DNA from: Haplodiscus bocki
Lineage: Eukaryota
NCBI GenBank assembly: GCA_965655095.1
Contig: OZ296653.1
Span: 9,858,001-9,922,000 of the forward strand
Length of the DNA: 64,000 bases
Direction of reading: 5' to 3'
Under the pieces are notes generated by a model. It worked only from the letters and a program-made list of their open reading frames with translations, made no database searches and was not told the DNA's origin. The translations under genes and the position numbers were made by a program. Below, in pieces: positions 1,741 through 57,897 of this stretch (the stretch's first letter is position 1; every line of letters starts with the position of its first letter).

Positions 1741-1755
1741 GCTCTGGTCGCACCA
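1741..1755 (-). promoter_or_regulatory. Primer-binding site of the left LTR element
   Basis: The minus strand reads TGGTGCGACCAGAGC a few nt after the LTR's ...TACA end. The TGG start is typical; the cognate tRNA was not identified. Confidence 0.65.
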
Positions 1756-1760
1756 GATGT

Positions 1761-24585: not shown

Positions 24586-25390
24586 CCCGGTTTGAGGTCC
24601 CAGAGACAATCAGCGCTGTTTCAGAGATTTGACATTTCTCAGCGCTGATTGAGATCACGCAAAATACCAGTGCTGTGTCAGATCTGATCAGCTCTGATTT
24701 TCTGAACGCTGAAACAATTGGTTTTCAGCACTGATTTACTCTGAATCAGCGCTGATATCTACACGTGCAGATGAGAACAATAACTTGTGATAAAGTAGTC
24801 AAAAAGTGATGGGAACGCATAAAGTGGTTAACGAAATGGCATTCCAGGTATTTGAAAAATTTAAATTTTCCTATTTTTCTGTTGAATTTTTCTGCGAAAA
24901 CTCAAAATTTCTGCAACATTCTTGAAAGCTCATTCCACTAAACGGGAAAATGCTTTTGAAAACTTCAACCATATCAGTTTCCTCACTTGAGCAGCATCAA
25001 AGGACCCAAAAAATTTAGTGTATTTTATATCTTTGGCCTGCCAAAAGATTGGGCCATTTAGACTGAAAATCAGAATTCTGTGCCTCGAAATTGAGGTACT
25101 TCAAAAAATACGAAAAAATTGAATTGAAAAATGTCATCCTAAATCCACGAAAAATCAGCGCTGATCAGAGCTGTTTCGGAGAAGATAAGCGCTGTTTAAG
25201 AGGAAATCAGCCCTGTTTTGCTGCACTGAAAAAATAGGTTTTCCGCGCTGGTAAAAGCTGAATCAGCGCTGTTCAGAGATTTTCAAGTAATGTACAGTGC
25301 TGAATCAGAACTGAAACAGCTTTGGTTAGCGCTGATAATTTCTGAACCACAGGTGATCAGCGCTGAAATCCTCTGAGACCTCAACCCGAG
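24586..25390. mobile_element. Non-autonomous TIR element, CACTA/EnSpm-like
   Basis: ~20-bp TIR CCCGGTTTGAGGTCCCAGAG / CTCTGAGACCTCAACCCGAG, 2-bp CT flanks, and many subterminal TCAGCGCTGA palindromes at both ends. The superfamily call is inference. Confidence 0.7.
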
Positions 25391-26990
25391 CTAGTATGCA
25401 TGCGCCGTAAATATTTTATTCATAATTTTACATCATTCAGAAAGACGTTACCGAGTTAAAAATGGAAGCCAAAATTAGCAGCTCGAAAGTTGATTTGAAC
25501 GCTCACTGTTATCCACAATCATCAGATAAATAGGGTAATAAAGATTCACTCTTTGAAGAAGAAGTTTGCAGTCTGTAATTTGATCCGTTGGGAAATGTAA
25601 CAAAAATAGAGGAATTCTACAGACGGCTTAATTAACATATTTTCCCGCGCAACAAATTTGTAATTATGGTGAATGAAGAGAGATTGCTCGACTTTTGGGA
25701 AAACTAAAGAAGACAATTCGGGGCCCAAAATCTAGCTCAAATCTCTTAAGGGTAACATGCAAATCCTGCAGCGTTACATGAAAACGGTGTCTAGTAATTT
25801 ACAATCTACATGATCTGCAACTAGTGAACACTTAGAAAAATGTACCAAATTTACATTCACTACAAGAAGGTGCACATAACCCACAAACTCAGCGTACACA
25901 GGTTACCTTATTTATTACCAGTTACGTATCACCAAACACTTCATTTTCGAAAAACTCATTTTCTATACTTCGAAGTCTAGAACTGAAGGGGCGTAATTTT
26001 AAAGCTTTTTTACGGCGTTTCATGGAATAATTGAGCAATGAATTGAGAAACCTTTATATTTTTCTCAAAAAAATCACAATGGAGCCCGGGAGAATTTTTC
26101 AATTTTAGCGGCACCAAAAAAGGTTTGAACAACGGAGTGGTCTAACAGGGTCCACCGGAGCTTAACAATCGAAGCTGAGGTTACTGACCAAAATCATCCC
26201 TCGCAGCATGCTTTCTGCAAAAGTAAAAGAAGTGAGAAACCGTCTCTCGTTCCAATTTATAATTAAGTCTCGAGAAATTCTAATTGAAAGGAGAAACCAA
26301 CTTTATTCGCAAGTTTTTCAACTGGAGAAAAGGGGTCAATAGTTTTGCAGGGAAAGCTAGAATACGTAATTCAACAAACTTTCAAAGTTACAAACTATTT
26401 TTGCGGTTTTTCCTACTTTTAACTGTTTCCGGCTGCGTTAACTGTGTAATTTTTGAAAAAATATTATTCGGCCAAAATGTTTTTCCAGACACGCAGAATG
26501 CAGTTCTGACAACACTGCCGAAAACTTTTCGCTCAAAGTACGAGAAGCTTTATAAATTTTATTTTTTTCAACAGTTTTTCCCTATTTCCTTCTAAACAGA
26601 TATAATCTTAGGTTTTGCTTTTGCTGAAACTAACTTTTCTCCCTAACCACTGGTTGAATTCTTTTATCATGGTCTCAGTCGACAGCCTTTTACTTCAGGA
26701 GTACTTTTCAAAAGCGAAAACATCACTGTTTTTCTTTGCATCAGAATCCTGACATGCCAAAAAAGATAATACAGATTTCGGTTTTCAAACTCACGATTTT
26801 CCAAAATCACTAGCTTGCCTTTCTGCATCAAAAATTCAACCGAAAGCTCTCTAACAAGAGGTAAAGAAATCATTCTCTCGCCGCGCGCACATTTCACTTG
26901 AACTTTTAATTTCACGCATTTACAAAATTGCACTATTTTCGCTCAAAATATACACGAGGACACTGTTTTTGAAAAATTTAGTTTTTCTGA

Positions 26991-38900: not shown

Positions 38901-41900
38901 TGTATTGCAGAAGAACGGTAGTGAGTTTGTCACCGAACACTATGTATAACAGTTTACAGTAGCTTTCTTAGATTTTTCTTGGAATTGTTGTCCGAAAATT
39001 ATTGAAGAAAATTCTATAATGAAGATCTTGGACACTTCCATAATTAAGATTAATGTTTAATTATCTCAAGAAAACTAATTTGAACAAGCATTTCCTCACT
39101 ATGAGGCAAATTTGTGGTACCTCCTTTGGTATACCCTACTGCCTTGGTATACCCTACTTCATTTCACAAAAAATTTGGTGTTGTTAGCTGCTTTGACAAC
39201 AAAGTAATTACGTTAAAAAAGTGACAATTGAGTAATCATCATGACTCTATTACTTTATTAAAGTAATTACTTGGTTGTCAAAGCAGCAAACACCAACTAC
39301 TTTGTCAAACGAAGATAGGTATACCAAGGGAGGTACTTGGTTGTCAACTCGAGTTTTGATCAAAACTGTTATTGATTTCAAAACATTTCCGCAAACAAAT
39401 CGATCCTAAATAAAGGGCAATAATACTTCAATTTTGGGTATTATAGCATTGGTAATTATCAGGGATCGGATTTTGATGTTGATATTTCGATCAATATATG
39501 TCATTGAATGTGTTCTTAAAAACAAAACAATATGCTAATCAGCGCTTCAAACATTAAGTATCCAAGCACTTCCACATTATTACAAGGCGATGTTGGACTG
39601 TCCGTTCATGCCTTTGTGGAGAGAAATACGAATAAATCCTCATCGAGCAGAAATTGCATCCGAACTTATAGATATTCAGGGAAATCCGAAAATTTTTTTC
39701 GTAGAGTGCAAGGCAATTTCTTAGTTCTCCGAAATATGGAAGTGAGCATTGCGAGCTTCCTTTTATTTCTCAAAAATATGTCAATGAGGTGTCAATTCAT
39801 CAAGAATGAAGCAAAATATGTTTAAACAATGGTTATATGCAAAAAAAACATGAAAATCCGAGCCTGGTTATTGTGTCACATTGGAAATTACAATCTGACT
39901 TCCTAAAACTCAGATAGTTTCGTCATGTCGCGATTTTGATTTTTAAATAAATGGCGATTCGGTTTCCATTATTTTTGCGCAGTTTCAAAAATTGTCCATT
40001 GGAATCGAATTCCTTTACAATCGAAAGTTGAATCAAATATTTGAACATCGAAAATCCTAGCATCGACTAAAAATATATTGAAAATTGCATTTTTTTGAGA
40101 CCGAAAAGCGTCGCAAACCAATTGCAAGTTAATTAGCTATTTGTATTGCAGAAAAACGGTAGTAAGTTTGTCACCAAACACTATATATAACAAGTTACAG
40201 CAGCTCTCTTAAATTTTTCTTGGAATTGTTGTTGGAAACTTAGTGAAAAAATTTCTAGAATGAAGATTTTGGAGACTTCCACAATGAAGATTAATGTTTA
40301 ATTATCTCAACGAAAACTAATTTGAACAAGCTTTTCGTCACTATGAGGCAAATTTGTGGTACCTCCCTTGGTATACCGTACTCCTCTGGTATACCCTACT
40401 TCATTTCACAAATTTTTTGGTGTTAGCTGCTTTGACTACCAAGTAATCACGTTAAAAAAAGTAACAATTAAGTAATAATCATGACTCTATTACTCTATTA
40501 AAAGAAGTACTTGGTTGTCAAAGCAGCAAACACCAAAAATTTTGCGAATTGAAGTTAGGTATACCAACGGAGGTACTTGGTTGTCAACTCGAGTTTTGAT
40601 CAAAACTGTTATTGATTTCAAAATTGGTACAATGGCGTTTCTTTTCGGTTTCACAGCGCCGAAAAATTTGCTGAGCGAAAAAACTGGTTTATGGAAAGGT
40701 GTATCAGTTGTTGAATTAATATCTTTTGAAGAACACAAAAAGCAGCAGAGTTCTTGCCCGTGTTCGTCAGTCCTTGAAAATGACAAAATTGAAACTGAAA
40801 TGTAGAGTCTGAACGGTTCGTCATCAAATCTGTGGTTGAAACAGTATCATTTCTGTCGGGCAAAAATTTTACAAAAAGCACCGACTAAAAAGACCAGTTT
40901 CTGTTTCCTGAAAAATGCGTTCACATTGCGGGAAATTCTAAGAAACTTAACTTCGAAATCAATTTGAAAAAAAGCCCAGTTTTTGTGGCGCTTTACACGA
41001 AAAAATGCCCAACTAATACACTGGCTTTTTTGTTCACCTTTTCCCAACACTGATCACCAAAATTTTTCAATGTCCCGCCACCCCTCCAAAAAAACATTGA
41101 GTCAAATAGGCAGCGTTGACGTCAATATTCCTCTCTTGCTGAGATTTTTATTCAGTCATAACATTCCTCCATAACATTCCCAAAAAAGACGAAACTTTTC
41201 ATCCTAGTCAAATTCAATTACATACATTGGGAGAAATTTCAAAAATGATGGTAAATTAATAACTAAAGGGCAATTATACTTCAATTTTGGGTATTATAGC
41301 ATTGGTAATTATCAGGGATCGTATTTTGATGTTAATATTTCGATCAATTTATGTCATTGAATGTGTTCTTAAAAACAAAACAATATGCTAACCAGCGCTT
41401 CAAACATTAAGTATACAGGCAGCTACAGATTATTACAAGGCGATGTTGGACTGTCCGTTCATGCCTTTGTGGACAGAGAAATACGAGTGAATCCTCAACG
41501 AGCAGAAATTGCATACGAACTTTTAGATATTCAGGGAAATCCGAAACTTTTTTTCGTAGAGTGCAAGGCAATTTCTTATTTCTCCGAAATATGGAAGTGA
41601 GCATTGCGAGCTTCCTTTTATTTCTCCAAAATATGTCAATGACGTGTCAATTCATCAATAATGAAGCAAAATATGTTTGAACAATTGTTTTATGCAAAAA
41701 AAACATGAAAATCCGAGCCTGCTTATTGTGTCAAATTGGACATTTTGTTCTGACTTCCTAAACCTCAGATAGTTTCATCATTTTGCCATTTTGATTTGTA
41801 AAGAAATGGCGATTCGGTTTCCATTAGTTCTGGGCAGTTTCAAAACTTGTCCTTTGGAATCGAATTCCTTTACAATCGAAAGTTGAATCAAATATTTTAA

Positions 41901-44900
41901 ACATCGAAAATCCTAGCATCGACTAAAAATATATTGAAAATTGCATTTTTTTGAGACCGAAAAGCGTCGCAAACCAATTGCAAGTTAATTAGCTAATTGT
42001 ATTGCAGAAGAACGGTAGTAATTTTGTCACCAAACACTATATATAACAAGTTACAGTAGCTCTCTCAAATTTTTCTTGGAATTGTTGTTGGAAACTTAGT
42101 GAAAAAATTTCTAGAATGAAGATTTTGGAGACTTCCACAATGAAGATTAATGTTTAATTATCTCAACGAAAACTAATTTGAACAAGCTTTTCGTCACTAT
42201 GAGGCAAATTTGTGGTACCTCCCTTGGTATACCGTACTCCCCTGGTATACCCTACTTCATTTCACAAATTTTTTGGTGTTAGCTGCTTTGACTACCAAGT
42301 AATCACGTTAAAAAAAAGTAACAATTAAGTAATAATCATGACTCTATTACTCTATTAAAAGAATTACTTGGTTGTCAAAGCGGCAAACACCAAAAATTTT
42401 GCGAATTGAAGTTAGGTATACCAACGGAGCTACTTGGTTGTCAACTCGAGTTTTGATCAAAAGTGTTATTGATTTCAAAATTGGTACAATGGCGTTTCTT
42501 TTCGGTTTCACAGCGCCGAAAAATTTGCTAAGCGAAAAAACTGGTATATGGAAAGGTGTATCAGTTGTTGAATATATATCTTTTGAAGAACACAAAAAGT
42601 AGCAGAGTTCTTGCCCGTGTTCGTCAGTCCTTGAAAATGACAAAATTGAAAATGAAATGTAGAGTCTGAACGGTTCGTCATCAAATCTGTGGTTGAAACA
42701 GTATCATTTCTGTCGGGCTCTATTTTTACAAAAAGCACCGACTAAAAAGAGCAGTTTCTGTTTCCTGAAAAATGCGTTCACATTGCGGGAAATTCTAAGA
42801 AACTTAACTTCGAAATCAATTTGAAAAAAAGCCCAGTTTTTGTGGCGCTTTACACGAAAAAATGCCCAACTAATACACTGGCTTTTTTGTTCACCTTTTC
42901 CCAACACTGATCACCAAAATTTTTCAATGTCCCGCCACCCCTCCAAAAAAACATTGAGTCAAATAGGCAGCGTTGACGTCAATATTCCTCTCTTGCTGAG
43001 ATTTTTATTCAGTCATAACATTCCTCCATAACATTCCCAAAAAAGACGAAACTTTTCATCCTGGTCAAATCCAATTACAAACATTGGGAGAAATTACAAA
43101 AATGATGGTAAATTAATAACTAAAGGGCAATTATACTTCAATTTTGGGTATTATATCATTGGTATTTATCAGGGATCGGATTTTGATGTTGATATTTCGA
43201 TCAATATATGTCATTGAATGTGTTCTTAAAAACAAAAAAATATGCTAATCAGCGCTTCAAACATTAACTAGCCAAGCAGTTCCATATTTTTACAAGGCGA
43301 TATTGGACTGTCCGTTCATGCCTTTGTGGACAGAGAAAAACGAGTGAATTCTCATCGAGCAGAAATTGCATACGAACTTTGAGATATTCAGGGAAATCCG
43401 AAACTTTTTTTCGTAGAGTGCAAGGCAATTTCTTGTTTCTCCGAAACATGGAAGTGGGCATTGCGAGCTTCCTTTTATTTCTCCAAAATATGTCAATGAC
43501 GTGTCAATTCATCAATAATGAAGCAAAATATGTTTGAACAATTGTTTTATGCAAAAAAAACATGAAAATCCGAGCCTGCTTATTGTGTCAAATTGGACAT
43601 TTTGTTCTGACTTCCTAAACCTCAGATAGTTTCATCATTTTGCCATTTTGATTTGTAAAGAAATGGCGATTCGGTTTCCATTATTTCTGGGCAGTTTCAA
43701 AACTTGTCCTTTGGAATCGAATTCCTTTACAATCGAAAGTTGAATCAAATATTTTAAACATCGAAAATCCTAGCATCGACTAATAATATATTGAAAATTG
43801 CATTTTTTTGAGATCGCAAAGCGTCGCAAACCAATTGCAAAGTTAATTAGCTAATTGTATTGCAGAACTGTAAAAAGTTTGTCACCGAACACTATGTATA
43901 ACAGGTTACAGTAGCTTTCTTAGATTTTTCTTGGAAATGTTGTTCGAAAATTATTGAAGAAAATTTCTATAATGAAGATTTTGGAGACTTCCATAATTAA
44001 GATTAATGTTTAATTATCTCAAGAAAACTAATTTGAACAAGCATTTCGTCACTATGAGGCAAATTTGTGTTACCTCCTTTGGTATACCCTACTGCCTTGG
44101 TATACCCTACTTCATTTCACAAAAAATTTGGTGTTAGCTGCTTTGACAACAAAGTAATTACGTTAAAAAAGTGACAATTGAGTAATCATCATGACTCTAT
44201 TACATTATTAAAGTAATTACTCGGTTGTCAAAGCAGCAAACACCAACTACTTTGAGAAATGAAGATAGGTATACCAAGGGAGGTACTTGGTTGTCAACTC
44301 GAGTTTTGATCAAAACTGTTATTGATTTCAAAACATTTCCGCAAACAAATCGAGCCTAAATAAAGGGCAATTATACTTCAATTTTGGGTATTATATCATT
44401 GGTATTTATCAGGGATCGGATTTTGATGTTGATATTTCGATCAATATATGTCATTGAATGTGTTCTTAAAAACAAAACAATATGCTAATCAGCGCTTCAA
44501 ACATTAACTAGCCAAGCAGTTCCATATTTTTACAAGGCGATATTGGACTGTCCGTTCATGCCTTTGTGGACAGAGAAATACGAGTGAATTCTCATCGAGC
44601 AGAAATTGCATACGAACTTTGAGATATTCAGGGAAATCCGAAACTTTTTTTCGTAGAGTGCAAGGCAATTTCTTGTTTCTCCGAAACATGGAAGTGAGCA
44701 TTGCGAGCTTCCTTTTATTTCTCCAAAATATGTCAATGACGTGTCAATTCATCAATAATGAAGCAAAATATGTTTGAACAATTGTTTTATGCAAAAAAAA
44801 ACATGAAAATCCGAGCCTGCTTATTGTGTCAAATTGGACATTTTGTTCTGACTTCCTAAACCTCAGATAGTTTCATCATTTTGCCATTTTGATTTGTAAA

Positions 44901-46718
44901 GAAATGGCGATTCGGTTTCCATTATTTATGGGCAGTTTCAAAACTTGTCCTTTGGAATCGAATTCCTTTACAATCGAAAGTTGAATCAAATATTTTAAAC
45001 ATCGAAAATCCTAGCATCGACTAATAATATATTGAAAATTGCATTTTTTTGAGATCGCAAAGCGTCGCAAACCAATTGCAAAGTTAATTAGCTAATTGTA
45101 TTGCAGAACTGTAATAAGTTTGTCACCGAACACTATGTATAACAGGTTACAGTAGCTTTCTTAGATTTTTCTTGGAAATGTTGTTCGAAAATTATTGAAG
45201 AAAATTTCTATAATGAAGATTTTGGAGACTTCCATAATTAAGATTAATGTTTAATTATCTCAAGAAAACTAATTTGAACAAGCATTTCGTCACTATGAGG
45301 CAAATTTGTGTTACCTCCTTTGGTATACCCTACTGCCTTGGTATACCCTACTTCATTTCACAAAAAATTTGGTGTTAGCTGCTTTGACAACAAAGTAATT
45401 ACGTTAAAAAAGTGACAATTGAGTAATCATCATGACTCTATTACATTATTAAAGTAATTACTCGGTTGTCAAAGCAGCAAACACCAACTACTTTGTGAAA
45501 TGAAGATAGGTATACCAAGGGAGGTACTTGGTTGTCAACTCGAGTTTTGATCAAAACTTATTGATTTCAAAACATTTCCGCAAACAAATCGAGCCTAAAT
45601 AAAGGGCAATTATACCTCAATTTTGGGTATTATATCATTGGTATTTATCAGGGATCGGATTTTGATGTTGATATTTCGATCAATATATGGCATTGAATGT
45701 GTTCTTAAAAACAAAACAATATGATAATCAGCGCTTGAAACATTAAGTATCCAAGCAGTTCCACATTATTACAAGGCGATGTTGGACTGTCCGTTCATGC
45801 CTTTGTGGACAGAGAAATACGAGTGAATCCTCATCGAGCAGAAATTGCATACGAACTTTGAGATATTCAGGGAAATCCGAAACTTTTTTTCGTAGATTGC
45901 AAGGCAATTTCTTGTTTTATGCAAAAAAAAACATGAAAATCCGAGCCTGTTTATTGTGTCAAATTGGACATTTTGTTCTGACTTCCTAAACCTCAGATAG
46001 TTTGATCATTTTGCCATTTTGATTTGTAAAGAAATGGCGATTCGGTTACCATTATTTCTGGGCAGTTTCAAAGCTTGTCCTTTGGAATCGAATTCCTTTA
46101 CAATCGAAAGTTGAATCAAATATTTTAAACATCGAAAATCCTAGCATCGACTAATAATATATTGAAAATTGCATTTTTTTGAGATCGAAAAGCGTCGCAA
46201 ACCAATTGCAAAGTTAATTAGCTAATTGTATTGCAGAACTGTATTAAGTTTGTCACCGAACACTATGTATAACAGGTTACAGTAGCTTTCTTAGATTTTT
46301 TTCTTGGAACTGTTGATCAAAAATTATTTAAAAAAATTCTATAAAGAAGATTTTGGAGACTTCCATAATGAATGATGTTTAATTATCTCAAGAAAACTAA
46401 TTTGAAAAAGCTTTTCGTCACTATGAGGCAAATATGTGGTACCTCATTTGGTATACCCTACTGCCTTGGTATACCCTACTTCATTTCACAAAATTTTTGG
46501 TGTCCAAGTATATACGTTAAACAAGTGACAATTGAGTAATCATCATGACTCTATTACTTTATCAAAGTAATTACTTGGTTGTCAAAGCAGCAAACACCAA
46601 CTATTTTGTGAAATGAAGTTAGGTATACCAAGGGAGGTACTTGGTTGTCAACTCGAGTTTTGATCAAAACGGTTATTGATTTCAAAATATTTCAGCAAAC
46701 AAATCGATCCTAAATAAA
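26991..46718. repeat. ~19.7-kb tandem array: 13 core units with short (~1.24 kb) and long (~1.86 kb) periods and a ~6.2-kb higher-order repeat
   Basis: Marker ATG(C)TAA(T/C)CAG at 27761, 28982, 30840, 32087, 33330, 35187, 37044, 38285, 39532, 41385, 43242, 44482, 45721. Spacings 1221, 1858, 1247, 1243, 1857, 1857, 1241, 1247, 1853, 1857, 1240, 1239. Confidence 0.98.
31672..31891. repeat. ~220-bp palindrome present in every array unit (representative copy)
   Basis: GTACCTCC.TTGGTATACC...GCTGCTTTGACAAC.AAGTAATTAC pairs with GTAATTACTTGGTTGTCAAAGCAGC...GGTATACCAAGGGAGGTAC. Confidence 0.92.
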
Positions 46719-48639
46719 ATTGCGTTGACTCTCGATTCAAAATAGTTTTTGAAACAATTCGATTCCAAATAATTCAACACTACATAGCATCCCCTCTGAA
46801 AATAGAAAAAATGTGTATTAGTTTCCTTCCCAGAAACCGATGAAGTTTGATCGATCAACGCATCAAAATTACAGATTTAACAGAAAGCTTTGTTTTCTCG
46901 AGTACTTCAAATCTTTCTGAAGTGGAGCGAATCTGACAATTCAAGAGCTGCTTCATGGCATTAGATCATTCTACTGTTTAAAATTATCGCCATAGTAGTT
47001 TACACCTCAAATACGAACAATGAGAATCAATCAAACAAAACTTCACTCAATGAGGCCCGCATGAAGAAGATTCTGTTCCATGAAGTTATCAAAATGCTGA
47101 AAACTTTTTGCTTTTACTCAAAAAATCTCGTAGTTAAAATAATCCAAATGAACTGGAAGATCTTTGAAGAGGTCACGACATCATCGAGTAACTACAATTA
47201 ATTAACCTGTGATATAATTATTTCACAATTGTTCTCTCTGTTTTGAAATTGCATCTCTTCCTCTCAAATCATGAATGCGAGAGAACAAGACAAGCAGCCA
47301 ATTCAGCGGGAATTTCTTAATCGTCATAATAACCTGTCATCTTATTCCTTCAATAAATGCAATTCTTATTACTTTTAACTTCCTTGATTGCAGAAGTTAT
47401 CACCAAGTAATCACAATTTATTCAGGTTAATTAAACCATCATTTGTAGTAAAATCAAGTTCGGTTCTCAAAGGAAAACTCTTACAACGATAATCTAAAAA
47501 CTGTGGAAAATCTACCAAAATACTACTAAAAGGTCATATTACTTTTTTTCGATGAAAATAATTTGCCATTACGATGAGAGATTTCGCTGAAAGAGATCTA
47601 TTTTGTTTCATTTTCCAAGTTTTCAGTGCATGTAAAAAGTTGCGAAAAAAACCAACGGATAGATAAAGCATACAGTATTTAAGTAAGAGAGGAGGCTATG
47701 ATTTTTTCAAAGTTCTGAAATACTTCTTTTTCCTCACTGAAAGATACAGAAGTAAGAATATAAATTTCACAGAACTCGGATGTTGCTTGTGGAGACGTTT
47801 AAGTGTGTGAACATCGGAAAATCTTTGATCAAAAAATATGCCAAAAAATCATCCTCAACGATGCATGAAAAACGGAAATAACGGCTCCCAATATTTTTTT
47901 AAAAAAATGAAAAGTATCGTTCCTTCAGGACTATGCCAAGAACATTAATATTCAAGTTCTTGCTAAAATTCTATAGAATCCGGTAGTGGCACCTTAATGC
48001 TACGTTTTTCTTTGTTATCAATAGTTTTACTGGCATTTCCTGCCGCGAAATCTGACATCAATTTTTCAATCTCGCCGTGCTGGAATCATTTCGGAACATT
48101 TCTCCCAAATTTTATCAATCATTTTTTGCATCAAATACAATAAAAAAAAAAGATTACAAAATACCATCACGCACCAATACAGGTGTATAGCTCTTTATTC
48201 GTTGCTAATTCGAAGGAATGAAGTAACATCCTATTGGGAGGAATGCTTCAAATCGAGCGTGAACAATTTTTTTAGTCTGTTTTTCCTTGTCTTTTTTTAA
48301 CAGCAAAGAGCATTAGGATTATCCCCTATTCAGTTTTTGGTTTTCCTTGGGCTGCTAAATTGAATCCGCAGTACATCACAGGAAAAAGTATCTTTGTACC
48401 AACCAATCTACTTACCTGTGCGTACCTGCCTGCTACCTTATGATACCCCTTTGTGAAATATTATTACACCACTGTCGACCTTTTATTGATCATCACGCAA
48501 ACCCAAATTAATGCATTCAGTAAAGAGCTCATCCAATATACAGCAAAAAAATGAAACCCCTCGTTTTGTTTACCAACATTGTAACGAGTATTACGTAACT
48601 ATTGTGGTTATTATTGCATAACGGTTGCGGGCATTGATA

Positions 48640-49438
48640 CAGTAGTGTCAGAAAAGAATGGAACCTTTATTTGTGAATTAATTCTGGAACCCTACAAATA
48701 CTTCCGTAATACTCAAAAGCGACTGAAAATTACAATATAAGGTCGAAACAAAAGTTTCTTAGAATTTTATCTAGTTTACAATGATCTTCGTTTGAAATTT
48801 CTAGAATCATTGTTATAGAAGTTCGGAGATTTGGCATCTCTATGTATTAAGATAGAAGGTTGATTTTGCAATCACAACTTTCGATAATTTAAGTACCTTC
48901 TGCTCCGTTTTTGTTTACATTTCATATACTGAAAGATGCCCGTCATCCACTGATTACACTCAGAAGTTGGCAGCTCCCCAGTGTTTACATTATCAAAATG
49001 CGGAGACATTCTCTAAGAAAAAGTAGTCATCCCAATGTTAATACGTTGTAAAGGGTGTTATTTCTTACAGAATGTCTCCGCATTTTGATAATGTAAACGC
49101 TGGGGAGCTGCCAACTTCTGAGTGTAATCAGTGGATGACGGGCATCTTACAGTATATGAAATGTAAACAAAAACGGACTAGAAGGTACTTAAAACATCGA
49201 AAGTTGTGACGCAAAATCAACCTCCTATCTTAATACATAGAGATACAAAATCTCCTAACTTCTATAATAATTATTCTAGAAGTTTCAAACAAAGATCATT
49301 GTAAACTAGATAAAATTCTAAGAAACTTTTGTTTCGACCTTATATTGTAATTTTCAGTCGTTTTTGAGTATTACGCAAGTATTTGTAGTGTTCCAGAATT
49401 AATTCACAAATAAAGGTTCCATTCTTCTGACACTACTG
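48640..49438. mobile_element. Fold-back MITE copy 3, Tc1/mariner type
   Basis: TA|CAGTAGTGTCAGAA...TTCTGACACTACTG|TA; 799-bp palindrome. Confidence 0.93.
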
Positions 49439-50006
49439 TACATAACGGTTGTGCGGGGATTCATAAATCACTGAATTTGAGACCCTCTTTTTCTATTGTC
49501 AAGCTTCTAATGACCAGCCTAGACTTTATTACATTTATAACAGATTGTTATTATTACTGGCATTACTGAGTTAGTCCTTGATTACAACATTGGTCAAGTT
49601 TCAACTGAGGGGTTTGAACCAAAGGGATCGAATGTTGGAAGAGAAGGGTTCTACCAAAAGTGTTGCAGAAAATGTAGATGTATGTTTCCGGTGTACTGAA
49701 AAATCCAGCCTCTTTAAACCACAAAATGTTATTTTATATAGATTTTTTCAAAAGTGCATTTCTATGAAAAACCCTTTCAACAACCATTTCCTCAATTTTC
49801 CAGTAGCGGTGGTTTTTGGGTGTTCCTAATTGACAAAAAAATTGGAGGAAAAGTGAAGAAAAACGACGGGAACTTTTTTAAAACAGCACGTGATAGAAGC
49901 AAAATGTTTTGCTGTAACTATACTTTTCAACAATTCATGATTACTTGGTTCAAATCCAAAAATTTGTTACATAATTCAGAAAATCATTACGATACATTAT
50001 CAAAAA

Positions 50007-50221
50007 ATGCGTTCCGCGCCATCTCTGAGCAGAGCTCACATTCAACCGCTGGTTAGGAACGTGAGAGAAAACCACAAGAGCTCAATCCAAATTCTATCTT
50101 TGCTTCCTCTGGTCTTTCTCTACCTCTACCTGGGCACAGCTTTCGGGTGCATCCGGGTCTATCTTACCAATCTACCTTTTCGGTGTTATACCCCCATAGA
50201 AAACGACCCAATTTTTGATGA
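50007..50221 (+). CDS. Nested SLC22-like MFS transporter, exon 1
   Basis: ATG at 50007. TM1 (ILSLLPLVFLYLYLG) is followed by LPFRC, like SLC22 P.HRC. The phase-2 donor GA|GTTGAG fits the next acceptor. Confidence 0.65.
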
Positions 50222-50608
50222 GTTGAGAAATTCAAATAAAATCAAAGGCCCGTATAAATGATGACCATTTCTTATATTATATTTAAAAATTGTTGATGAA
50301 ATACTAGAGCTCCACAAATTTTTCTAAGAAAACGTCCAGAATTATCAAATTTGAATAAAAAAATCCTAAAGTTAATGGCCCGGACCTCACTCACAATTTT
50401 CAAAACATTTCAATTTCAAAACGTATCAAATGTAACGATTCGCTGACAAGTTGCCGTTGAATTTTCATCCAAATTAATAATTTCAAAATTTTCAACATAC
50501 CTTTTCATTAATTATCGAAAACTTTTTCGGCAGGCTTTGAAACTTTCTTGACCTACCAAAAAATAGCACGACACAAAATTGTGCCCCAATAAAAGTTCAA
50601 CATATCAG

Positions 50609-50865
50609 TGATATGTTTGGAATCTGGAATGGTCAACATGGAAAAGGTCAGAGAATGGTTGAACAACTGTTACTTCCTGACCGTGATCTGACCACGAATC
50701 CCCGAAGATTTGAGACTCCTCACAGCTGCAAGAAGTACAACTCTGATCACGTGCAGTCGATTCTCACTCGACAGAACGGAAGCAAGATCACCAAGACACA
50801 GTTCGATGCATATGTCACTGAAATGGCAAACAAACAACCAGAATACATTAACTGCGGACCTCTAG
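50609..50865 (+). CDS. Nested SLC22-like transporter, exon 2 (large extracellular loop)
   Basis: ATCAG|T GAT. Contains SCKKY...INCGPLG with the loop cysteines. Probable donor AG|GCAAAA; alternative in-phase GT at 50872. Confidence 0.7.
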
Positions 50866-51283
50866 GCAAAAGTTTTGGAAACAGGGGGCAAACATTTTGA
50901 CTAAACATATTTTTGAGAATAAAAGTCACGGTTGATTTGAAAATGACTTGCGATTAGAAAAACAGTTTAGTTCGCAAAGGTATCGTTTTTACGTTAAAAA
51001 TTATGGAAAATTGAAATAAGTTCATCAAACAAAGTTTAAGCACGGTATCTTTTACCCACGTACTACCAAATTAGGATCTCTCATTGATAAAAAACTTCAT
51101 GCTTTTATTTGAGAAAGTTGCCGAAAACTTCATTGGCATTTGTAATTTTGTAAAAATCAGTAATGAATGTTAGGAAACAATTATATCGCCAAAGCTGAGA
51201 ATTTGACCAAGAAACAATTTTCCGATATCAATCGAATTAAGTTCATTAAAACTAACCCTTGTTGTTGAAACCTTTGCTTGCAG

Positions 51284-51629
51284 GATGGCAGTTCGACCGC
51301 GCAGACATTCAAAGCACCTTACAGTCTCATTACAAATTAGTGTGTGAGCGTAAGGTGTTGATAAACACGATGCGCTCTCTCGGCTCCTTAGGTCAATTTC
51401 TCGGCTCCGCCTTTCTCTGTTTCGGAGACGTCGTTGGCCGAAGTTTTCTCTTCTTCGCTGCGTCATTTATTCACGCTGGTTCTGGCTTTCTCATGATAGT
51501 GATGCCGGATTTCATGGGCTTTGTCATATGCTACATGCTCTACATGGGCGCAGCCATTACTATTTTCGCTTTGGGGTTCATAAGTGCGTGTGAGTTTTGG
51601 AATGACAGTCCCAATAAACGGATTATAAG
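51284..51629 (+). CDS. Nested SLC22-like transporter, exon 3
   Basis: GWQFDRADIQSTLQSHYKLVCERK matches the SLC22 GW.YD....ST...W.LVC motif, and GDVVGR matches MFS motif A. TTGCAG| ... AG|GTAGTA. Confidence 0.85.
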
Positions 51630-52112
51630 GTAGTACTGTTCCTCCGAGTGAACTTTTTAGTTTAGCACTCCTGTCACATAACAATTTAGTGCTTTTGAAA
51701 TTGAGAAAAAATGTTCGATGATAATAATTTAGGATTATTTTGATCAATTTGCGGTCAAACTCTTCACAGAAACATTCAATGCACACATTTGAACAACTAA
51801 TTGAACTTTTTAGCGGAAATTCCAAATTAAAGCGCTCAAATCGTAGGCACAAAATTTTGATGAGTACCGACATTGAAACTTCAGCAACTTTTTGAATTTT
51901 ATGAAGCACTAATTTTTGTTTCATAAAATTTTACAAACAAAATGAAGTGGACGTGTTGTAATGCTACAACTATCATTATCTATCCTCAAACTGACCTTAA
52001 AAATAAACCAACCAAGTCACACGAAAGACGAACCAACTGAAAAACTTTACCAACAAGCAAAATTTTGAAGTTATTCAACGATGGTTTGCTAAAACTATAT
52101 TAAAATATACAG

Positions 52113-52460
52113 CGTGGGCCTTCTTGGCGCCACCTTCGGAGTCGGAATCGCCTTATCGGGATGCTTCTCCCTTTACATGACCGATTGGTCCTCCCTTCTT
52201 TGCTTGATTACTTCAATCTACCTGATAGTGGCAGCCGGGATCACCCCCCTGTTAGTAGTGATAGCTAACCCGGATATAACTACGGGTAGACGACGCATTT
52301 CGTGTTTGCAGTTCCTTCGACTAGCTTTCTTCCCAAAAAGCAACTTTCCTTCCACACCGAGCGAGACTCCACAAAAACGAAGGGCTAGTTTCATTGAAGT
52401 TCCCAAAGCTTATATAAAGACAAGTATTCTGTTGAGATTGTATGACAATGATAGCTTCAG
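52113..52460 (+). CDS. Nested SLC22-like transporter, exon 4
   Basis: TACAG|C GTG. Encodes TM5-TM6 (…YMTDWSSLL…) and the central loop; phase-2 donor AG|GTCGTC. Confidence 0.7.
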
Positions 52461-52855
52461 GTCGTCGGTCAAGCTACAAAACTTGCTATTTTTTTCCAAT
52501 TAATTGCACAATCAAAGTTTCCAAAAACTTGCAGCGATTTTTTTGTTAGTTAACCATCCTTTGGAATACGGAAGTAGTAAAATATTGATTTTTCCTCTTT
52601 GCCTGAAATCCAGTTATTAATTTGTGTATATTGAGTAAAATACACAACACACACCAAGTCATTTGTGCATTTCACTTTCCTTTCATTTTTGCCAAAATGT
52701 TCTGAAATCAATTTACAAGTTTTTGATTCTCATAACAAAATTCTTATCGATTAATTTAAAGGAATCAACTGGATCTAAAATCTTGAAGAACTCCATCAAA
52801 TCAAATCAATACCTTTTCTAACAAGTGACTTGACCTCTGACCTGGTGACCTCCAG

Positions 52856-52986
52856 ATTTGTTTCGTGGCTCCTCGTTCTCAACTGGACAGCCACTACAGT
52901 CGCCTATTACAGCATCAACTACTACAGCGCCCCCATGAACTTACAATTCGTTCCCCCTACCTTAGAGTGGATGCTATACGAAGCAG
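52856..52986 (+). CDS. Nested SLC22-like transporter, exon 5
   Basis: CTAAC branch site, then CTCCAG|A. LNWTATTVAYYSINY matches the SLC22 W....VYYGL motif. The best-fitting donor is the non-canonical CAG|GAACAC. Confidence 0.65.
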
Positions 52987-53239
52987 GAACACATCTATTC
53001 TTTATTTTCTCTTTTCTCTCCATACTTTTTTGTGAAATTTTCAAAAGAGACCTTTTCTAAATTAAATACATAGTCACCTAATGAAGATTTCTAGCATCGG
53101 AAAATACCAAAAATCTTTCTTTTTTTGAAGAGTTTTACTTAACATCAATTCGTTTTTGGTCCTTTCTAATATAAAATACGAAACATTTTGGTACTTAACT
53201 TAATTTAAACTCGGGGAGAAAAAGAAAAAAGTTCTCCAG

Positions 53240-53491
53240 GAACCTTTGAGGCGGGTTCTAATCTTGTCTACCTGGCAGTTGTCCTTTTATGGAAAGATAG
53301 AGTCAAGTCTTACTGCTTGTTTCTGGTTATTAGTGGAGCTACCAGAACATTTGCTCTCTTTTTCCATTCCTTCCCTGTGGTTGAGTTTATCCTTACTCGA
53401 ATTGGAACAATTACAGTTGCAGGAGCCTTTACTGGTCTTTATTTGACAACAATGGAACTGTTACCCGACTGTCATCGGAGCACGCTTTTAG
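53240..53491 (+). CDS. Nested SLC22-like transporter, exon 6
   Basis: CTCCAG|GA. IGTITVAGAFTGLYLTTMELLPDCHRSTLLG matches the ELFPT..R...G motif; donor G|GTTATA. Confidence 0.85.
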
Positions 53492-54038
53492 GTTATATAA
53501 TCGACAGGTCATATATTTGAATACGAAAAACCACCACACGGAAAATTAACTAAGAAGTGAAAGTTACTGGACCCAAAAGTTTAATATTTATGGATGTAAA
53601 TTTCCAATAATTTGAATCCTTAAGGGTTATAAAAATTTGACATCACTTTCCGCTTGACAATGTTTGCGAATCACAGCAAGAAAGAGATGGCTCAAGCCGG
53701 GAACGCCTAAAATCGGCGCCGTCCATAAGGCTCAAAATATACCTGGGGGCGCCATTTTTGGAAAAATTCAGCTTTTACGAAGAAAAATTGTACAAAAACG
53801 TTTTCTCTTGGTCTCGCATTGCCGAAAAATGCGCAAAGGGACTTTCTAGTACAAAAAATACTGCCTGAGAAAGGCATTAGTTTAAGATAATTTGGTTCAA
53901 GCGTTTTTGAAAACACAGAGGATCGAACGTTTCTCCTTGAAATTGAATCTGAACAATTTAAACAGTGGGGCTCTTTTCAAAAGTGCCGACTAAAAGTCGA
54001 AATTGCCCAACAGATTTGACCAGTCCCTTTTCGAACAG

Positions 54039-54238
54039 GAATAAGTTCGGGTGGAGGTCGGCTGGCGGGAGTGATTCTTCCTTATTTGGAGCCGTACGTC
54101 AACGAAATATTCGACAATCTCCTGTGGATGGTCTGTGGCTGCATAGCTGTTGGCGCTGCTCTCAGCTCTCTAATGATCAGGAATGTCTGCAGTAGGAAGA
54201 TAATCTTCCAAGATACGAGCGAACTACCAAAAAACTAA
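54039..54238 (+). CDS. Nested SLC22-like transporter, exon 7 (terminal)
   Basis: AACAG|GA. Encodes GISSGGGRLAGVILPYL...TM12...ELPKN with TAA at 54236-54238. The seven exons total 1749 nt = 582 aa plus stop. Confidence 0.8.
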
Positions 54239-54907
54239 CAAGACGCCCGGCTACCACCGGGTTATTTTCCACCTTCCAACTACTAGAAACAATGTATTTC
54301 CGAAAAGATACTTTTTTATATGCTGCCTTCCACAGCATTTAAAAAATTTTCCCGCAAATTTGAGTTTTTCATCGAAAAAACTCAAATTTTTGTCGGAAAA
54401 CGTTTAAAGGAAATTTTACCAATACGTACCAATACTGTACAACAAATTTCCCACCTTCTTCTGATTTTGAAAAAAAAATATTTTTCAAAAAAAAAGTTTT
54501 TTCAAAAAAGACTTATTTTCTTACGTATTTGAGAAACACGATTATTCAAGTCGCAAATTTCCTACTTCACAGTTGTAAAAAATTCAAAGTTAGACTTGTG
54601 CAATTGGCAGGTAAACGTAAAACACGCCCGATTTGTTTGAATTTCTTTGCGGTCTGAGGAACCAAACTTTTTCTGTTTCAAATATTTATTTCCTGTGCTT
54701 CAAAACTTGAAAAAATATTTATAGGGGCCGCCGCACTGTTTCTAAGTTTCAAAAACTGGCGACTTCAAGTGTCAGACGAACAATTGTCATATTTGCATGG
54801 AAAGTCCTCACAGAAAAAACCGCAAGTTTTTACCAACGACTTTCTACAATTTTTCGCGAGTAAACTGACGCATGTATTTACGAAATTAAACAAATAGGTT
54901 TTTTTTT

Positions 54908-55173
54908 AATGCTGATCAAAAATATGTGGACATTCGTGTGTGGTGGTCGGCAGTGGTGGATCTAATGTGAAGAAACTGGGTACCACGTTTGAGCAATGTG
55001 TCAACAAGAAGATGTATTACACCATGATCGACAAAGATAACGACCAGATTAAAAAGTTTGTCATGGAGAGAGCAGATAGAGAACTGCAACAGGAACTCAA
55101 CGCTAAGATGAGGGTGAACTGCTTCAAAAACAAAACATTCTCCACACAACAAACTCACGCTGATATCAACTGA
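54908..55173 (+). pseudogene. Unidentified coding-like fragment
   Basis: Open, exon-like codon composition (KKLGTTFEQCVNKKMYYTMIDKDNDQIKKFVMERADRELQQELNAK) with AATAAA at 55498. No clear start codon or acceptor. Confidence 0.35.
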
Positions 55174-57663
55174 AACTAGCGATGCTCCGGATATAGTCTG
55201 GCCGGATTTTTTTTTGTCTTGCGTCGGATCTTTTGGAAAGTGCGGCTGTGCTCAAATTGTGCTATAACGCAGCTGGATCTCAAATTAGATTTACATCGTG
55301 AAAACCAAAGTGAATGACAAGTTCTAAATCTTTCAAATTCAACTTTTCACTCGTTTTTGAAATCAAAGGATTCTGTTCTTCTTCGTAAATGTTTCCGAAC
55401 TCTGAAAACACTGTCTCTCAATATTCCGTTGTTGAATGCAAGCTCTTAATGTGTATTTGTTAAAAATGATTTTATTTTGATTTTATGTGGGCTCTGGAAT
55501 AAACTTAGTACAGCATCAATTTCAACCCGGTCCGATTCCGGAACAAAAATTAAGCGTTTCAATGTATACCTAATCAAAACCAAATGTCAGTTATTAATTC
55601 ATTAATAATCAGTGATGTCAATTAAAAATGACATTTTAGTACAGCATTTCTCAAAATAATTATTTACAACCAAAAAAAAATTTGCTTTGATTCAATAATT
55701 GCTCATAAAATCCGATAATTAGCAAATTCGGTTTTCAGAGCCCAAAAAATTTTCATTAGGAGGGCAAAGAATTTTTTAGCCAATCATTTTAGCGCTAGTT
55801 CAGCTAGCTGGATTTTCTCAGCTTTTCGTCAATTCTTTGTTTCTGAAATCTCAACTTTAAAAAATCATCATTTCTTTCGAGTCAAACTAAAGATTTTGGA
55901 AAATTGACATCACTGATGATGAGTGGTGATCAAGGATGTGGGTGAATTAAATGTATGCTCAATTAATGCGAGGAGATCGAATCTCATAAAAACAAAGCAT
56001 GATGAAATGTCGGTTGATTTATGTTTAGCGGGATCTTTTCTAAATGTGCAAAATTGAGATCTTAGTTATGAGAACAAAATCCGGATTTGGATATAATTCA
56101 CATCAAAATCGCAGTCAGACACAACATTAGCGAAAAGATCCATGTTTAAGTATATGAGCTTGATGATACTATTTTTTTCGCTTCTCTATGGATGCAAAGA
56201 ATTCAAAACTGCCGATTTTAAATTTTTAAAATCTATTATAAGATTACCTGAATAATTCTGAATGAATATTTACTATAATTTCTGCTGACAAGCTTGCTAT
56301 TTTCTTGAAGTTGAGTTACAGGAAGAGGCTAAATTGATTTGGTATCAAACCAAACCTGAGACGACATCGCAGAAGCGAACAAGCCCGCAAGGCTCCAAAT
56401 ATTTAAGGGGGCCCCGTACATCACATTGCCGGTAAATCATAATCTTGGGAGTGGCGAAGTCTCAATAAAATGGGACATTTCCTAGAAAACATTTTTGTAC
56501 TCGCCGAGTCTGGAATCCATATATTTGTCTCAAAAATCTTTCTGTCATACCCTGTAGACCGACCAACTTCTCAAATTCGTATCAAGTAATTCCCCAGTTT
56601 TCAAGACAAGCTGATTTGACATCATTTAGGATGACATGCACTCATAGGGATGTTGTTGATGGTTCTTTCAAAGAACATTTAAGCCATAAGGGTGCAATCA
56701 TTTTTAGGAAGAGCGCTAAGATTCACGAACCTCACTGAATGTGAAGACGTTACTTAACATTCTAAATGAAAGTTAGCTTCATCAAAGATCTCGAAATATA
56801 CACCTAAAAAAGTTAATCTTATAAACAAAATACACAAATCAATCCCATCAAAAACCACAGAGGCGAGCGAAGCAGAACTTCGCAACAAATTCTGACTTGT
56901 CAGTAGAGATAAAAATTAAAAATTACACATCAAAGGTCCTGAGAGACATTTGAAAACATGATCGGAGAAGTGATTGACACTCTCAGACTAACTACATTAG
57001 ATGTCAAATGAATGTTTGTCCCAAAAAGTCAAATTCAGATAAGTACTTGTCACAGTGCCTCATGCTCAAACATAAAATCTGTCAACCATTCCTTTTTAGA
57101 TTTTGCCATTTTGTTTACGATTTGAACAGTAAACAACGCGGAAATGAACAATAAACCACCAACAGTGCACCATATTCATGATATTGATAAGTAAAACATG
57201 ATTTTTTAGGAGGCTGTTGTTCATTTTTTCAGACCATATTTTTACAAAATTCCTGCTATTCACAACGCGAAAATAAACAACAACTTGCCACAAGTCCCAA
57301 AAATGTCATATTTGATCGTTTTCACTACACCGCTAGGCTCTCTCATGACATCACAAAATGCAAGTTTTGGACGGGATAAAAAATTAAGTGTAACCCGGTT
57401 TCTATACGCATTCTTCCTTTCGGGCAGAATGTGTAAAAACAAAAATTCAAAGACAACCCCAGTATTTTTACAATGCAAGTTGACGAACGATAATTGAAAT
57501 AAACTTGATACATGCGGAGAAGCTAACAACTTTTCAGACATTGCTGCCCATATTGAATGGAATAAAACTCAAACACAGAACGAAAAAGTTGATCGTCGAA
57601 TGTTTCGTGCGATTTATTTTCGTAGAAAACATAATTACTACATAAAAGTTTTTTTTATCCTAG

Positions 57664-57897
57664 ATCGGCCTTTTGGGAATCCAGCTGTTGTGGACGAGAG
57701 ATGCGACCGAGGCACTGGCTAACACCAAGTATGACCGGACTATCATGAAGAAGACAAACGACCGTTTCCTGGAGATGCTGAATACTCTCATTCACCAGAC
57801 GACCAAAGACTTGGAGTCTGTGTGGAAGTTCGAGAGACGAAAGTATGAGACACTCATCACCATCCACGTGCATCAGAGAGACATTTTCAATGAACTC
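57664..57897 (+). CDS. DNAH5: Dynein heavy chain exon e
   Basis: CCTAG|ATC GGC...CTC|[19 protein letters not shown]...[19 protein letters not shown] directly continues NYPAQ of exon d. Confidence 0.97.

What the first reader, a model, noticed from the sequence alone, without database searches (positions are those of the whole stretch)
50007..54238. Complete multi-exon transporter gene nested on the same strand inside the dynein intron
Seen: seven phase-compatible exons give an uninterrupted 582-aa SLC22-like protein with MFS motifs in the right order, entirely within intron 24294-57663 and co-oriented with the host. Known: nested genes are more often antisense. A sense, intron-containing guest forces the host transcript to skip 12 splice sites and read through a poly(A) site. 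The protein is divergent (no clear PESPRWL or LPET motif), so its substrate may be unusual.
Basis: partly seen in the sequence, partly recalled or inferred. Interest (0 to 1): 0.75.

Follow-up and report, generated by a model that had tools for sequence, protein, structure and literature searches.

The report
Transporter gene nested in dynein intron
A working, divergent organic-ion-transporter-like gene sits in the same direction inside one long intron of a cilia motor (dynein) gene; a distantly related worm has the same layout, so it is a real but fairly ordinary nested gene whose most unusual feature is that two of its introns seem to start with GA instead of GT.

Summary

- **Host intron:** the flanking dynein exons abut at residues 1828|1829 of axonemal dynein heavy chain 5. 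So 24294-57663 is a single phase-0 intron.
- **Conserved layout:** one related genome (locus L001) has the same dynein exon, transporter, dynein exon order on one strand.
- **Selection:** introns do not align between the two genomes, but every exon does. Differences by codon position are 70:43:316, with pN 0.086 against saturated pS 0.76. This rules out a pseudogene.
- **Family:** exon 3 matches only SLC22 organic-ion transporters (profile E 5e-17). Exons 5-7 match weakly but in the right order. The PESPRWL and PET motifs are absent.
- **Corrections to the model:**
  - Exon 1 runs to about 50251.
  - An eighth conserved coding exon (54954-55173) ends the gene, giving about 648 aa rather than 582.
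- **Odd donors:** introns 5 and 7 need AG|GAA donors, the type known from Eurytemora and Oikopleura.

No RNA data exist, so transcription, the GA splices and host-guest chimeras are untested. Other notes of this scan report GA-start introns and a same-strand nested gene elsewhere in this genome. Overall this is a new member of a known kind, of moderate interest.

The parts
23924..24293 (+). Host exon (DNAH5-like axonemal dynein heavy chain). It ends in phase 0 with the donor cag|GTAAGAAT.
   Evidence: phmmer against PDB: aligns to 8j07_n0 residues 1706-1828, E 5e-45. Flanks. 96% aa identity to L001 598-975.
24294..57663 (+). Single 33.4-kb host intron that holds the guest gene, a repeat array and transposon debris.
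   Evidence: No dynein residue is missing between the two flanking exons. The acceptor is ttttttttatcctag|A.
57664..57897 (+). Next host exon.
   Evidence: Aligns to 8j07_n0 from residue 1829, E 3e-27. 99% aa identity to L001 17068-17304.
48473..48581 (.). Conserved non-coding block 1.4 kb upstream of the guest ATG. Candidate promoter or enhancer element of the guest, or an intronic enhancer of the host.
   Evidence: blastn: 74% identity to L001 6362-6461. The alignment shows long exact runs and no 3-base periodicity.
50007..50251 (+). Guest exon 1: ATG, TM1, the FRCYTP motif and the start of the large outer loop. Donor ccc|GTATAA at 50252. Alternatively the exon ends at 50247 with aag|GC, the site homologous to the relative's aag|GT.
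   Evidence: tblastn: 91% aa identity over the first 58 aa to L001 7096-7269, with position differences 4:2:38. Coding similarity continues through ...SNK(I/V)KG.
50609..50871 (+). Guest exon 2: outer loop with Cys residues and an NGS site. The start may be 50596 if the GC donor of exon 1 is used.
   Evidence: 72% aa identity to L001 9542-9775. Position differences 13:15:42. The donor aaa|GTTTTG is conserved in position.
51284..51629 (+). Guest exon 3: end of the loop, the STLQSHYKLVC signature, TM2-TM4 and a degenerate MFS motif A (GDVVGRS).
   Evidence: In PDB it hits only SLC22 chains (OCT1, E 2e-4). hhalign against SLC22 profile columns 125-235: E 4.8e-17, probability 98.8. 81% identity to P0001/L001.
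52113..52460 (+). Guest exon 4: TM5, TM6 and the central loop. There is no PESPRWL motif. The relative carries an extra intron inside this exon.
   Evidence: 82-86% aa identity to L001 12073-12240 and 12575-12763. Hydropathy, motif scan.
52856..52986 (+). Guest exon 5: TM7 (WLLVLNWTATTVAYYS). It ends cag|GAACAC, a non-GT donor.
   Evidence: 93% aa identity to L001 13264-13392. Nucleotide conservation ends at 52987. Weak colinear match to SLC22 columns 357-378. Junction options.
53240..53491 (+). Guest exon 6: TM8-TM10 and the ELLPDCHR motif.
   Evidence: 90% aa identity to L001 13943-14185. hhalign against SLC22 columns 412-474, E 1e-3.
54039..54180 (+). Guest exon 7: SSGGGRLAGVILP, TM11-TM12. 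Proposed donor cag|GAATGT at 54181, identical in the relative.
   Evidence: 92% aa identity to L001 14388-14534, ending at ...MIRNV. hhalign against SLC22 columns 478-494, E 8e-4. Junction enumeration.
54181..54238 (+). Here it is read as the start of intron 7.
   Evidence: No conservation beyond 54187. The relative's read-through tail is unrelated. Repeat boundaries and loose ends lie at 54235-54238.
54954..55173 (+). Guest exon 8: hydrophilic 72-aa tail and the TGA stop. The conserved acceptor ggcag|T is phase 2.
   Evidence: 86% aa identity to L001 14941-15129. Position differences 5:4:29. A stop falls at a similar place in both species. It is not dynein, because no dynein residues are missing.
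55498..55503 (+). First AATAAA after the stop; candidate poly(A) signal of the guest.
   Evidence: Pattern scan. The relative has AATAAA about 30 nt after its stop. No RNA evidence.

Best explanation
A functional, divergent SLC22-type (organic ion transporter-like) major-facilitator gene of eight exons (about 648 aa; coding sequence 50007-55173, + strand) lies wholly inside one 33-kb phase-0 intron of a DNAH5-like axonemal dynein heavy chain gene, in the same orientation.

Shown:
- The exons are open and phase-compatible.
- They are under strong purifying selection.
- The host-guest arrangement is shared with a relative whose synonymous sites are saturated, so the nesting is old and stable.

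Inferred:
- The guest is transcribed from its own promoter upstream of 50007 and ends at its own poly(A) site near 55.5 kb.
- The host polymerase reads through the guest, and the host's strong splice sites (cag|GTAAGA ... polypyrimidine-tag|A) remove the whole guest as intron.
- Five guest introns are GT-AG. [quoted passage not shown]
- All seven guest introns are phase 1 or 2, so any cross-splice with the phase-0 host intron would be out of frame.
- The protein most likely moves small organic ions across the plasma membrane. Its loss of the PESPRWL and PET motifs leaves the substrate, and even transport activity, open.
For: - Host intron: dynein exons abut at DNAH5 residues 1828|1829.
- Synteny: L001, from a 695-kb contig of another assembly, carries a DHC_N2 exon, the guest exons, then AAA_6 exons, all on one strand.
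- Selection: 597 aligned codons differ 70:43:316 by codon position, with pN 0.086 and pS 0.76. The host exons beside it give pN 0.021 and pS 0.68. Introns do not align at all.
- Family: exon 3 hits only SLC22 chains in PDB. Among 1.84 billion representatives it hits only SLC22-like proteins, which all carry Sugar_tr plus MFS_1. hhalign gives E 4.8e-17 at columns 125-235. Exons 5, 6 and 7 match columns 357-378, 412-474 and 478-494, in order. Hydrophobic segments fit TM1-TM12.
- Eighth exon and GA donors.
- The AG|GA+A consensus of known GA-AG introns: PMC7072748.
- Sequence check: DNA contigs of four runs from two samples reproduce 52300-56901 letter for letter, including both GA donors.
Against: - No RNA run exists for this organism. 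No transcript, splice junction, start site or poly(A) site is shown.
- Pfam finds nothing in any single exon.
- Exons 1, 2, 4 and 8 have no detectable family match.
- Two invariant SLC22 motifs are missing.
- Intron 5 has a GC-AG alternative, and the relative has a GT alternative for intron 7.
- Short-read contigs break in high-copy repeats at 56.9-57.35 kb. They do not physically bridge the guest to the downstream dynein exon.
- Only one related genome was available.
Confidence: 0.8

Rival explanations
1. Seven-exon transporter. Exon 7 reads through to the stop at 54236-54238. The conserved block 54954-55173 is an alternative terminal exon reached from a canonical phase-2 GT donor (exon 4 at 52461, exon 3 at 51630 or exon 1 at 50252), giving a shorter isoform. 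No GA donor is then needed at intron 7.
For: The exon 8 acceptor is phase 2, and exons 1, 3 and 4 end in phase 2 with GT donors. The relative could reach exon 8 from a good GT donor at 14627. GA donors are unproven here.
Against: The read-through tails are unrelated in the two species: 18 codons in the window against about 32 in the relative. The window's stop lies at a repeat edge. The 15 nt ATGATCAGGAATGTC around the proposed donor are identical in both species, although third positions are otherwise only 47% identical. cag|GAATGT matches the U1 consensus at every position except +2 and +4. This model still needs a non-GT donor at intron 5.
Confidence: 0.2
2. Decaying pseudogene or chance open frames inside a long intron.
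For: Non-canonical splice sites, missing family motifs, no Pfam hit on single exons, and no RNA data.
Against: Eight blocks stay open and colinear in two genomes whose introns no longer align. Differences are 70:43:316 by codon position and pN/pS is about 0.11. The start codon, the stop region and five GT-AG sites are conserved in position.
Confidence: 0.03
3. Assembly artefact: the transporter was placed into the dynein intron by a mis-join across repeats.
For: The intron holds a 20-kb repeat array and high-copy repeats. Short-read contigs break at 54.24 kb and 56.9-57.35 kb.
Against: An independent assembly of a different organism has the same order and strand on one 695-kb contig. Contigs overlap by their k-mer ends at 54241-54269.
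Confidence: 0.03
4. The guest exons have no promoter of their own. They are alternative exons of the dynein transcript, either as a fusion or as a bicistronic product.
For: Same strand. An AG at 49978-79 would give a phase-0, in-frame acceptor 27 nt before the guest ATG.
Against: That acceptor is absent in the relative. All guest introns are phase 1 or 2 against the host's phase 0. The guest keeps a conserved ATG in an A-rich context and its own stop and AATAAA.
Confidence: 0.05

Closest known systems
SLC22 family (OCT, OCTN, OAT, URAT1; invertebrate 'organic cation transporter-like' and 'carcinine transporter-like' proteins)
   Same: Exon 3 aligns to the end of the outer loop, the ...LVC signature and TM2-TM4 (about 30% identity, E 5e-17 against a profile). 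There is a large Cys- and N-glycosylation-bearing loop after TM1, a P-x-R-C-x-x-P motif after TM1, an E...R motif after TM4, and colinear weak matches for TM7 and TM9-TM11.
   Different: The invariant ES..WL (PESPRWL) motif after TM6 and the PET motif after TM12 are absent. Motif A is degenerate (DVVGRS). There is a 72-aa conserved hydrophilic tail with no known relative. The nearest proteins in 1.84 billion representatives are only 28-35% identical over exon 3.
Same-strand nested (intronic) protein-coding genes of animals
   Same: The guest lies wholly within one host intron, is co-oriented, and has its own ATG, stop and AATAAA. About 37% of human nested genes are co-oriented (PMC3192792). 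This scan's notes report a second case in this genome (methionine synthase in NDUFA13, an unchecked AI note).
   Different: The guest has eight exons (about 41% of human guests have a single exon). The nesting is conserved across saturated synonymous divergence. The guest has no phase-0 intron, while the host intron is phase 0.
GA-AG introns of Eurytemora affinis and Oikopleura dioica
   Same: The donors read AG|GA followed by A (cag|GAACAC, cag|GAATGT), the consensus reported for those species (PMC7072748). The relative shows cag|GGA donors at two places and cag|GAATGT at the shared one.
   Different: A different animal lineage (an acoel according to earlier notes of this scan; not tested here). 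No RNA support. Intron 5 also has a GC-AG alternative.

Membership tests
SLC22 (organic ion transporter family of the MFS) | Sequence similarity over TM2-TM4, including the signature before TM2 (STIVTEW[DN]LVC) | tested here: met
   The STLQSHYKLVC signature is present. phmmer against PDB returns SLC22 chains only. hhalign gives E 4.8e-17 at columns 125-235. Best library hits are OCT-like proteins.
SLC22 (organic ion transporter family of the MFS) | Large extracellular loop between TM1 and TM2 with conserved cysteines and N-glycosylation sites | tested here: met
   The end of exon 1, exon 2 and the start of exon 3 form a hydrophilic stretch of about 150 aa with RC, HSC, NC and LVC cysteines and an NGS site.
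SLC22 (organic ion transporter family of the MFS) | Twelve transmembrane helices in a 6+6 arrangement with a central loop | tested here: inconclusive
   Exon-wise hydropathy and weak colinear profile matches fit TM1-TM12. No fold or whole-protein profile was run, because the joined protein has no reference.
SLC22 (organic ion transporter family of the MFS) | PESPRWL motif after TM6 (E, S, W, L invariant in the reference alignment) | tested here: not met
   The sequence after TM6 reads ANPDITTGRRRISCLQFL. No PE[ST]P or ESP is found in any exon.
SLC22 (organic ion transporter family of the MFS) | (L)PET motif after TM12 | tested here: not met
   No PET or LPE in exon 7 or exon 8.
SLC22 (organic ion transporter family of the MFS) | MFS motif A, D-[RK]-x-G-R-[RK], between TM2 and TM3 | tested here: inconclusive
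   A degenerate DVVGRS is present: D, G and R are kept, but both basic positions are lost.
SLC22 (organic ion transporter family of the MFS) | Pfam Sugar_tr or MFS_1 above the gathering score | not testable with these tools
No single exon scores.
Sense-nested gene | Guest entirely inside one intron of the host, on the same strand | tested here: met
   Host exons abut at DNAH5 residues 1828|1829. All guest exons lie at 50007-55173 on the + strand. The same layout is seen in L001.
Sense-nested gene | Guest has its own transcript (own start site and poly(A) site) | not testable with these tools
   No RNA run for this organism. Only a conserved ATG, a stop and AATAAA are seen.
GA-AG (AG|GAA) U2-type introns | Donor GA preceded by AG and followed by A, with an AG acceptor | tested here: met
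   Intron 5 is cag|GAACAC...ctccag|G. Intron 7 is cag|GAATGT...ggcag|T. The consensus is taken from PMC7072748.
GA-AG (AG|GAA) U2-type introns | Spliced junction seen in RNA | not testable with these tools
   No RNA run.
U12-type introns (considered for the odd donors) | Donor /RTATCCTT and branch site TCCTTAAC near the acceptor | tested here: not met
   The donors read GAACAC and GAATGT. No TCCTTAAC lies before either acceptor.

The most novel reading that the evidence does not exclude
This worm lineage routinely splices AG|GAA (and AG|GGA) donors, as only a copepod and a tunicate are known to do, and the nested transporter keeps two such introns. One of them (intron 7) is unchanged between species whose synonymous sites are saturated. 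Together with the absence of any phase-0 intron in the guest, this would mean the guest's weak or odd splice signals have been kept because they stop the strong phase-0 host intron from cross-splicing productively with a same-strand guest.
Probability: 0.3. Interest if true: 0.6.

Novelty: new member of a known kind. Interest (0 to 1): 0.42.

Why it matters
It gives a clean, evolutionarily stable example of a multi-exon gene living in sense inside an intron of a large gene expected to be active in ciliated cells. With RNA data it could be used to ask how host and guest transcripts are kept apart: splice-site strength, intron phase and poly(A) read-through.

It also adds candidate GA-start introns in a third animal lineage, one of them conserved between species. 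Separately, it flags a strongly selected SLC22-like protein that has lost two hallmark motifs and gained a conserved tail. That protein is worth a transport assay.

In itself, nesting of this kind is common, and the transporter belongs to a well-known family.

Tried and rejected
- **Pfam on each exon:** nothing.
- **hhalign of exons 1, 2, 4 and 8 against an SLC22 profile:** nothing.
- **PDB search with exon 6:** only chance hits.
- **My first GT donor for intron 5 (53032):** rejected. With the 53240 acceptor it makes a TGA junction codon. With the 53279 acceptor it replaces a conserved segment by non-conserved sequence.
rejected, because coding similarity continues to 50247-50251.
- **Acceptor 52826 for exon 5:** rejected because it is absent in the relative.
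- **Block 54951-55140 as a missed dynein exon:** rejected, because no dynein residues are missing.
- **Block 48473-48581 as a coding exon:** rejected, because it shows no 3-base periodicity.
- **RNA evidence:** none available. The four runs that hold the stretch behave as DNA.
- **More distant SLC22-like relatives (P0003, P0005):** intronless genes with no dynein neighbours, so they say nothing about the age of the nesting.
- **Literature search for GA-AG introns in acoels:** found nothing.
- **Two-sequence exon profiles (A4-A7):** built but not used further, because at about 90% identity they add no sensitivity.
- **Joined protein:** the spliced protein was never assembled for a search, a family scan or a fold. 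All protein evidence is exon by exon.
Full report
**What is in the sequence.** I listed every GT, GC and AG site by phase. Five junctions can be made with GT-AG sites in compatible phases.

Intron 5 cannot be made this way:
- The only GT near the end of exon 5 is at 53032. With the good acceptor at 53240 it gives a TGA junction codon.
- With the acceptor at 53279 it would swap a conserved segment for non-conserved sequence.

**The host.** The exon ending at 24293 aligns to residues 1706-1828 of axonemal dynein heavy chain 5 in PDB entry 8j07. The exon starting at 57664 aligns from residue 1829. No residue is missing, so 24294-57663 is one phase-0 intron. Its sites are strong: cag|GTAAGAAT and ttttttttatcctag|A. 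The other dynein introns in the window are also GT-AG.

**A relative with the same layout.** A word search with exon 3 found one protein, P0001, at 81% identity. Its 695-kb contig (locus L001) carries, all on one strand, a dynein DHC_N2 exon, the guest exons, and then dynein AAA_6 exons.
- blastn of the window against L001 aligns only the dynein exons, guest exons 2-7 and two further blocks. The introns do not align.
- Exon 1 was missed by blastn but is 91% identical at protein level, with the ATG conserved.
- The exhaustive search of 1.84 billion representatives found no other close relative.

**Selection.** Over 597 aligned codons the two genomes differ at 70 first, 43 second and 316 third positions. 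pN is 0.086 and pS is 0.76, which is saturated. The dynein exons beside it give pN 0.021 and pS 0.68. So the whole locus diverged together long ago, and the guest has been under purifying selection throughout. This excludes a pseudogene and makes a mis-join very unlikely.

**Corrections to the gene model.**
- *Exon 1.* Coding similarity continues through ...FRCYTP(I/V)ENDPIF..LR.SNK(I/V)KG. The exon therefore ends at 50251 (GT donor) or at 50247, where the relative's aag|GT is aag|GC in the window.
- *Exon 7 tail.* Conservation stops at ...SLMIRNV (54187). The stop sits exactly where repeat copies begin in the DNA contigs.
- *Exon 8.* The block 54954-55173 is 86% identical at protein level, differs 5:4:29 by codon position, starts at a conserved cag|T acceptor and ends with a stop in both species. 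Its acceptor is phase 2.
- *Joining exon 7 to exon 8.* In the window this is possible only from cag|GAATGT at 54181, a site identical in the relative. No phase-2 GT or GC exists in the 3' part of exon 7. The only phase-2 GT or GC sites (54061-54124) would remove most of the conserved TM11-TM12 coding sequence.

The resulting model has eight exons, 1947 nt and 648 codons before the stop. Intron phases are 2, 1, 2, 2, 1, 1, 2. The first AATAAA lies at 55498.

**The odd donors.**
- Both window donors read AG|GAA. [quoted passage not shown]
- The relative shows cag|GGA donors at its intron 5 and at an extra intron inside exon 4, which the window lacks. It shows cag|GAATGT at intron 7.
- They are not U12-type, because there is no ATCCTT donor and no TCCTTAAC branch site.
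- DNA contigs of four runs from two samples reproduce 52300-56901 without any change at either donor. They are not assembly errors.
- Earlier notes of this scan report GA-start introns in two other genes of this genome and call it an acoel worm. I did not test the organism's identity.
- Without RNA these splices remain inference. Alternatives exist: GC-AG for intron 5, and exon 8 reached from exon 4 or another phase-2 GT donor.

**What the protein is.**
- Pfam finds nothing in single exons.
- Exon 3 alone hits only SLC22 chains in PDB: OCT1, OCT2, OCTN2, OAT1 and URAT1, at the right residues.
- In the large library it hits only proteins that carry Sugar_tr plus MFS_1 and are named organic cation or carcinine transporter-like.
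- Against a profile of eight of these (A1), exon 3 scores E 4.8e-17 at columns 125-235.
- Exons 5, 6 and 7 give weak matches at columns 357-378, 412-474 and 478-494, in the correct order.
- Exons 1, 2, 4 and 8 give nothing.
- Hydrophobic segments and motifs fit an SLC22 topology: P-F-R-C-Y-T-P after TM1, a Cys-rich glycosylated loop, STLQSHYKLVC, DVVGRS, E...R and ELLPDCHR.

This limits the family assignment to 'SLC22-like, divergent'.

**Assembly.** Short-read contigs cover 52300-54269, 54241-56901 and 57354-58200. They break in high-copy repeats, so they do not bridge to the dynein exon. The conserved synteny in L001 is the main argument against a mis-join.

**Context and verdict.** About 63% of human nested genes are antisense, so roughly a third are co-oriented (PMC3192792). 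Another sense-nested gene is on record in this scan's notes for this genome (an unchecked AI note, not tested here). The finding is therefore real, and well supported as a conserved, selected nested gene, but it is of a known kind. The points of added interest are:
- the multi-exon guest;
- its stability over deep divergence;
- the absence of any phase-0 guest intron inside a phase-0 host intron;
- the two candidate AG|GAA introns.

None exists in the runs on hand.

Noticed in passing
window 48473-48581 (L001 6362-6461): Conserved non-coding block 1.4 kb upstream of the guest ATG (0.64 kb in the relative). It is 74% identical, with long exact runs (AAATTAATGCAT, CAGTAAAG, TTGTTTACCAA, which contains a forkhead-like TGTTTAC core) and no codon periodicity. 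Candidate promoter or enhancer for the guest or for the cilia gene host.
   Followed up: partly
L001 about 12231-12581, against window 52267-52271: The relative has an extra intron of about 350 nt inside exon 4, with boundaries cag|GGATGA...acgcag|AC. The window reads straight through (ANPDITTG). This is an intron gain or loss, with a GG donor in the colinear model.
   Followed up: partly
window 52984-53243; L001 13394-13950: Under the colinear protein model, intron 5 sits 15 nt further 3' in the relative (YEAGILEAG|SNLV) than in the window (YEAG|TFEAGSNLV). Both have non-GT donors. The window intron is flanked by a 7-bp direct repeat, CAGGAAC. This could be intron sliding or independent insertion.
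   Followed up: partly
window 52826-52855: The 30 nt just upstream of the exon 5 acceptor are conserved in the relative and hold three TGACCT repeats (TGACTTGACCTCTGACCTGGTGACCTCCAG). Possibly a splicing or branch-site element.
   Followed up: no
window 50252-54953 (guest introns) against 24294-57663: All seven guest introns are phase 1 or 2, while the host intron is phase 0. Any host-guest cross-splice would therefore shift the frame.
   Followed up: partly
window 49978-50006: An AG at 49978-79 would make a phase-0 acceptor, in frame with no stop, 27 nt before the guest ATG. In principle this allows a dynein-transporter fusion. The AG is not conserved in the relative.
   Followed up: partly
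window 54236-54490 and 56830-57420: High-copy repeats. Summed contig depth rises from about 15-50 to 250-10,000, and short-read contigs break there. Pieces of the same repeat family also lie in intron 6 (about 53745-53811). Variants seen in the contigs are 54011 C>T, 56466 T>C and a T inserted after 57648.
   Followed up: no
window 295-864 (-) and 9146-10250 (+): A gag-like ORF and a hAT-transposase-like pair of ORFs lie upstream of the dynein exons. They were not examined.
   Followed up: no
L003 10001-11713: A distant SLC22-like relative (P0005, 570 aa, 30% identity to exon 3) is a single intronless ORF on a contig from a sister ENA assembly series. It has no dynein neighbours.
   Followed up: partly
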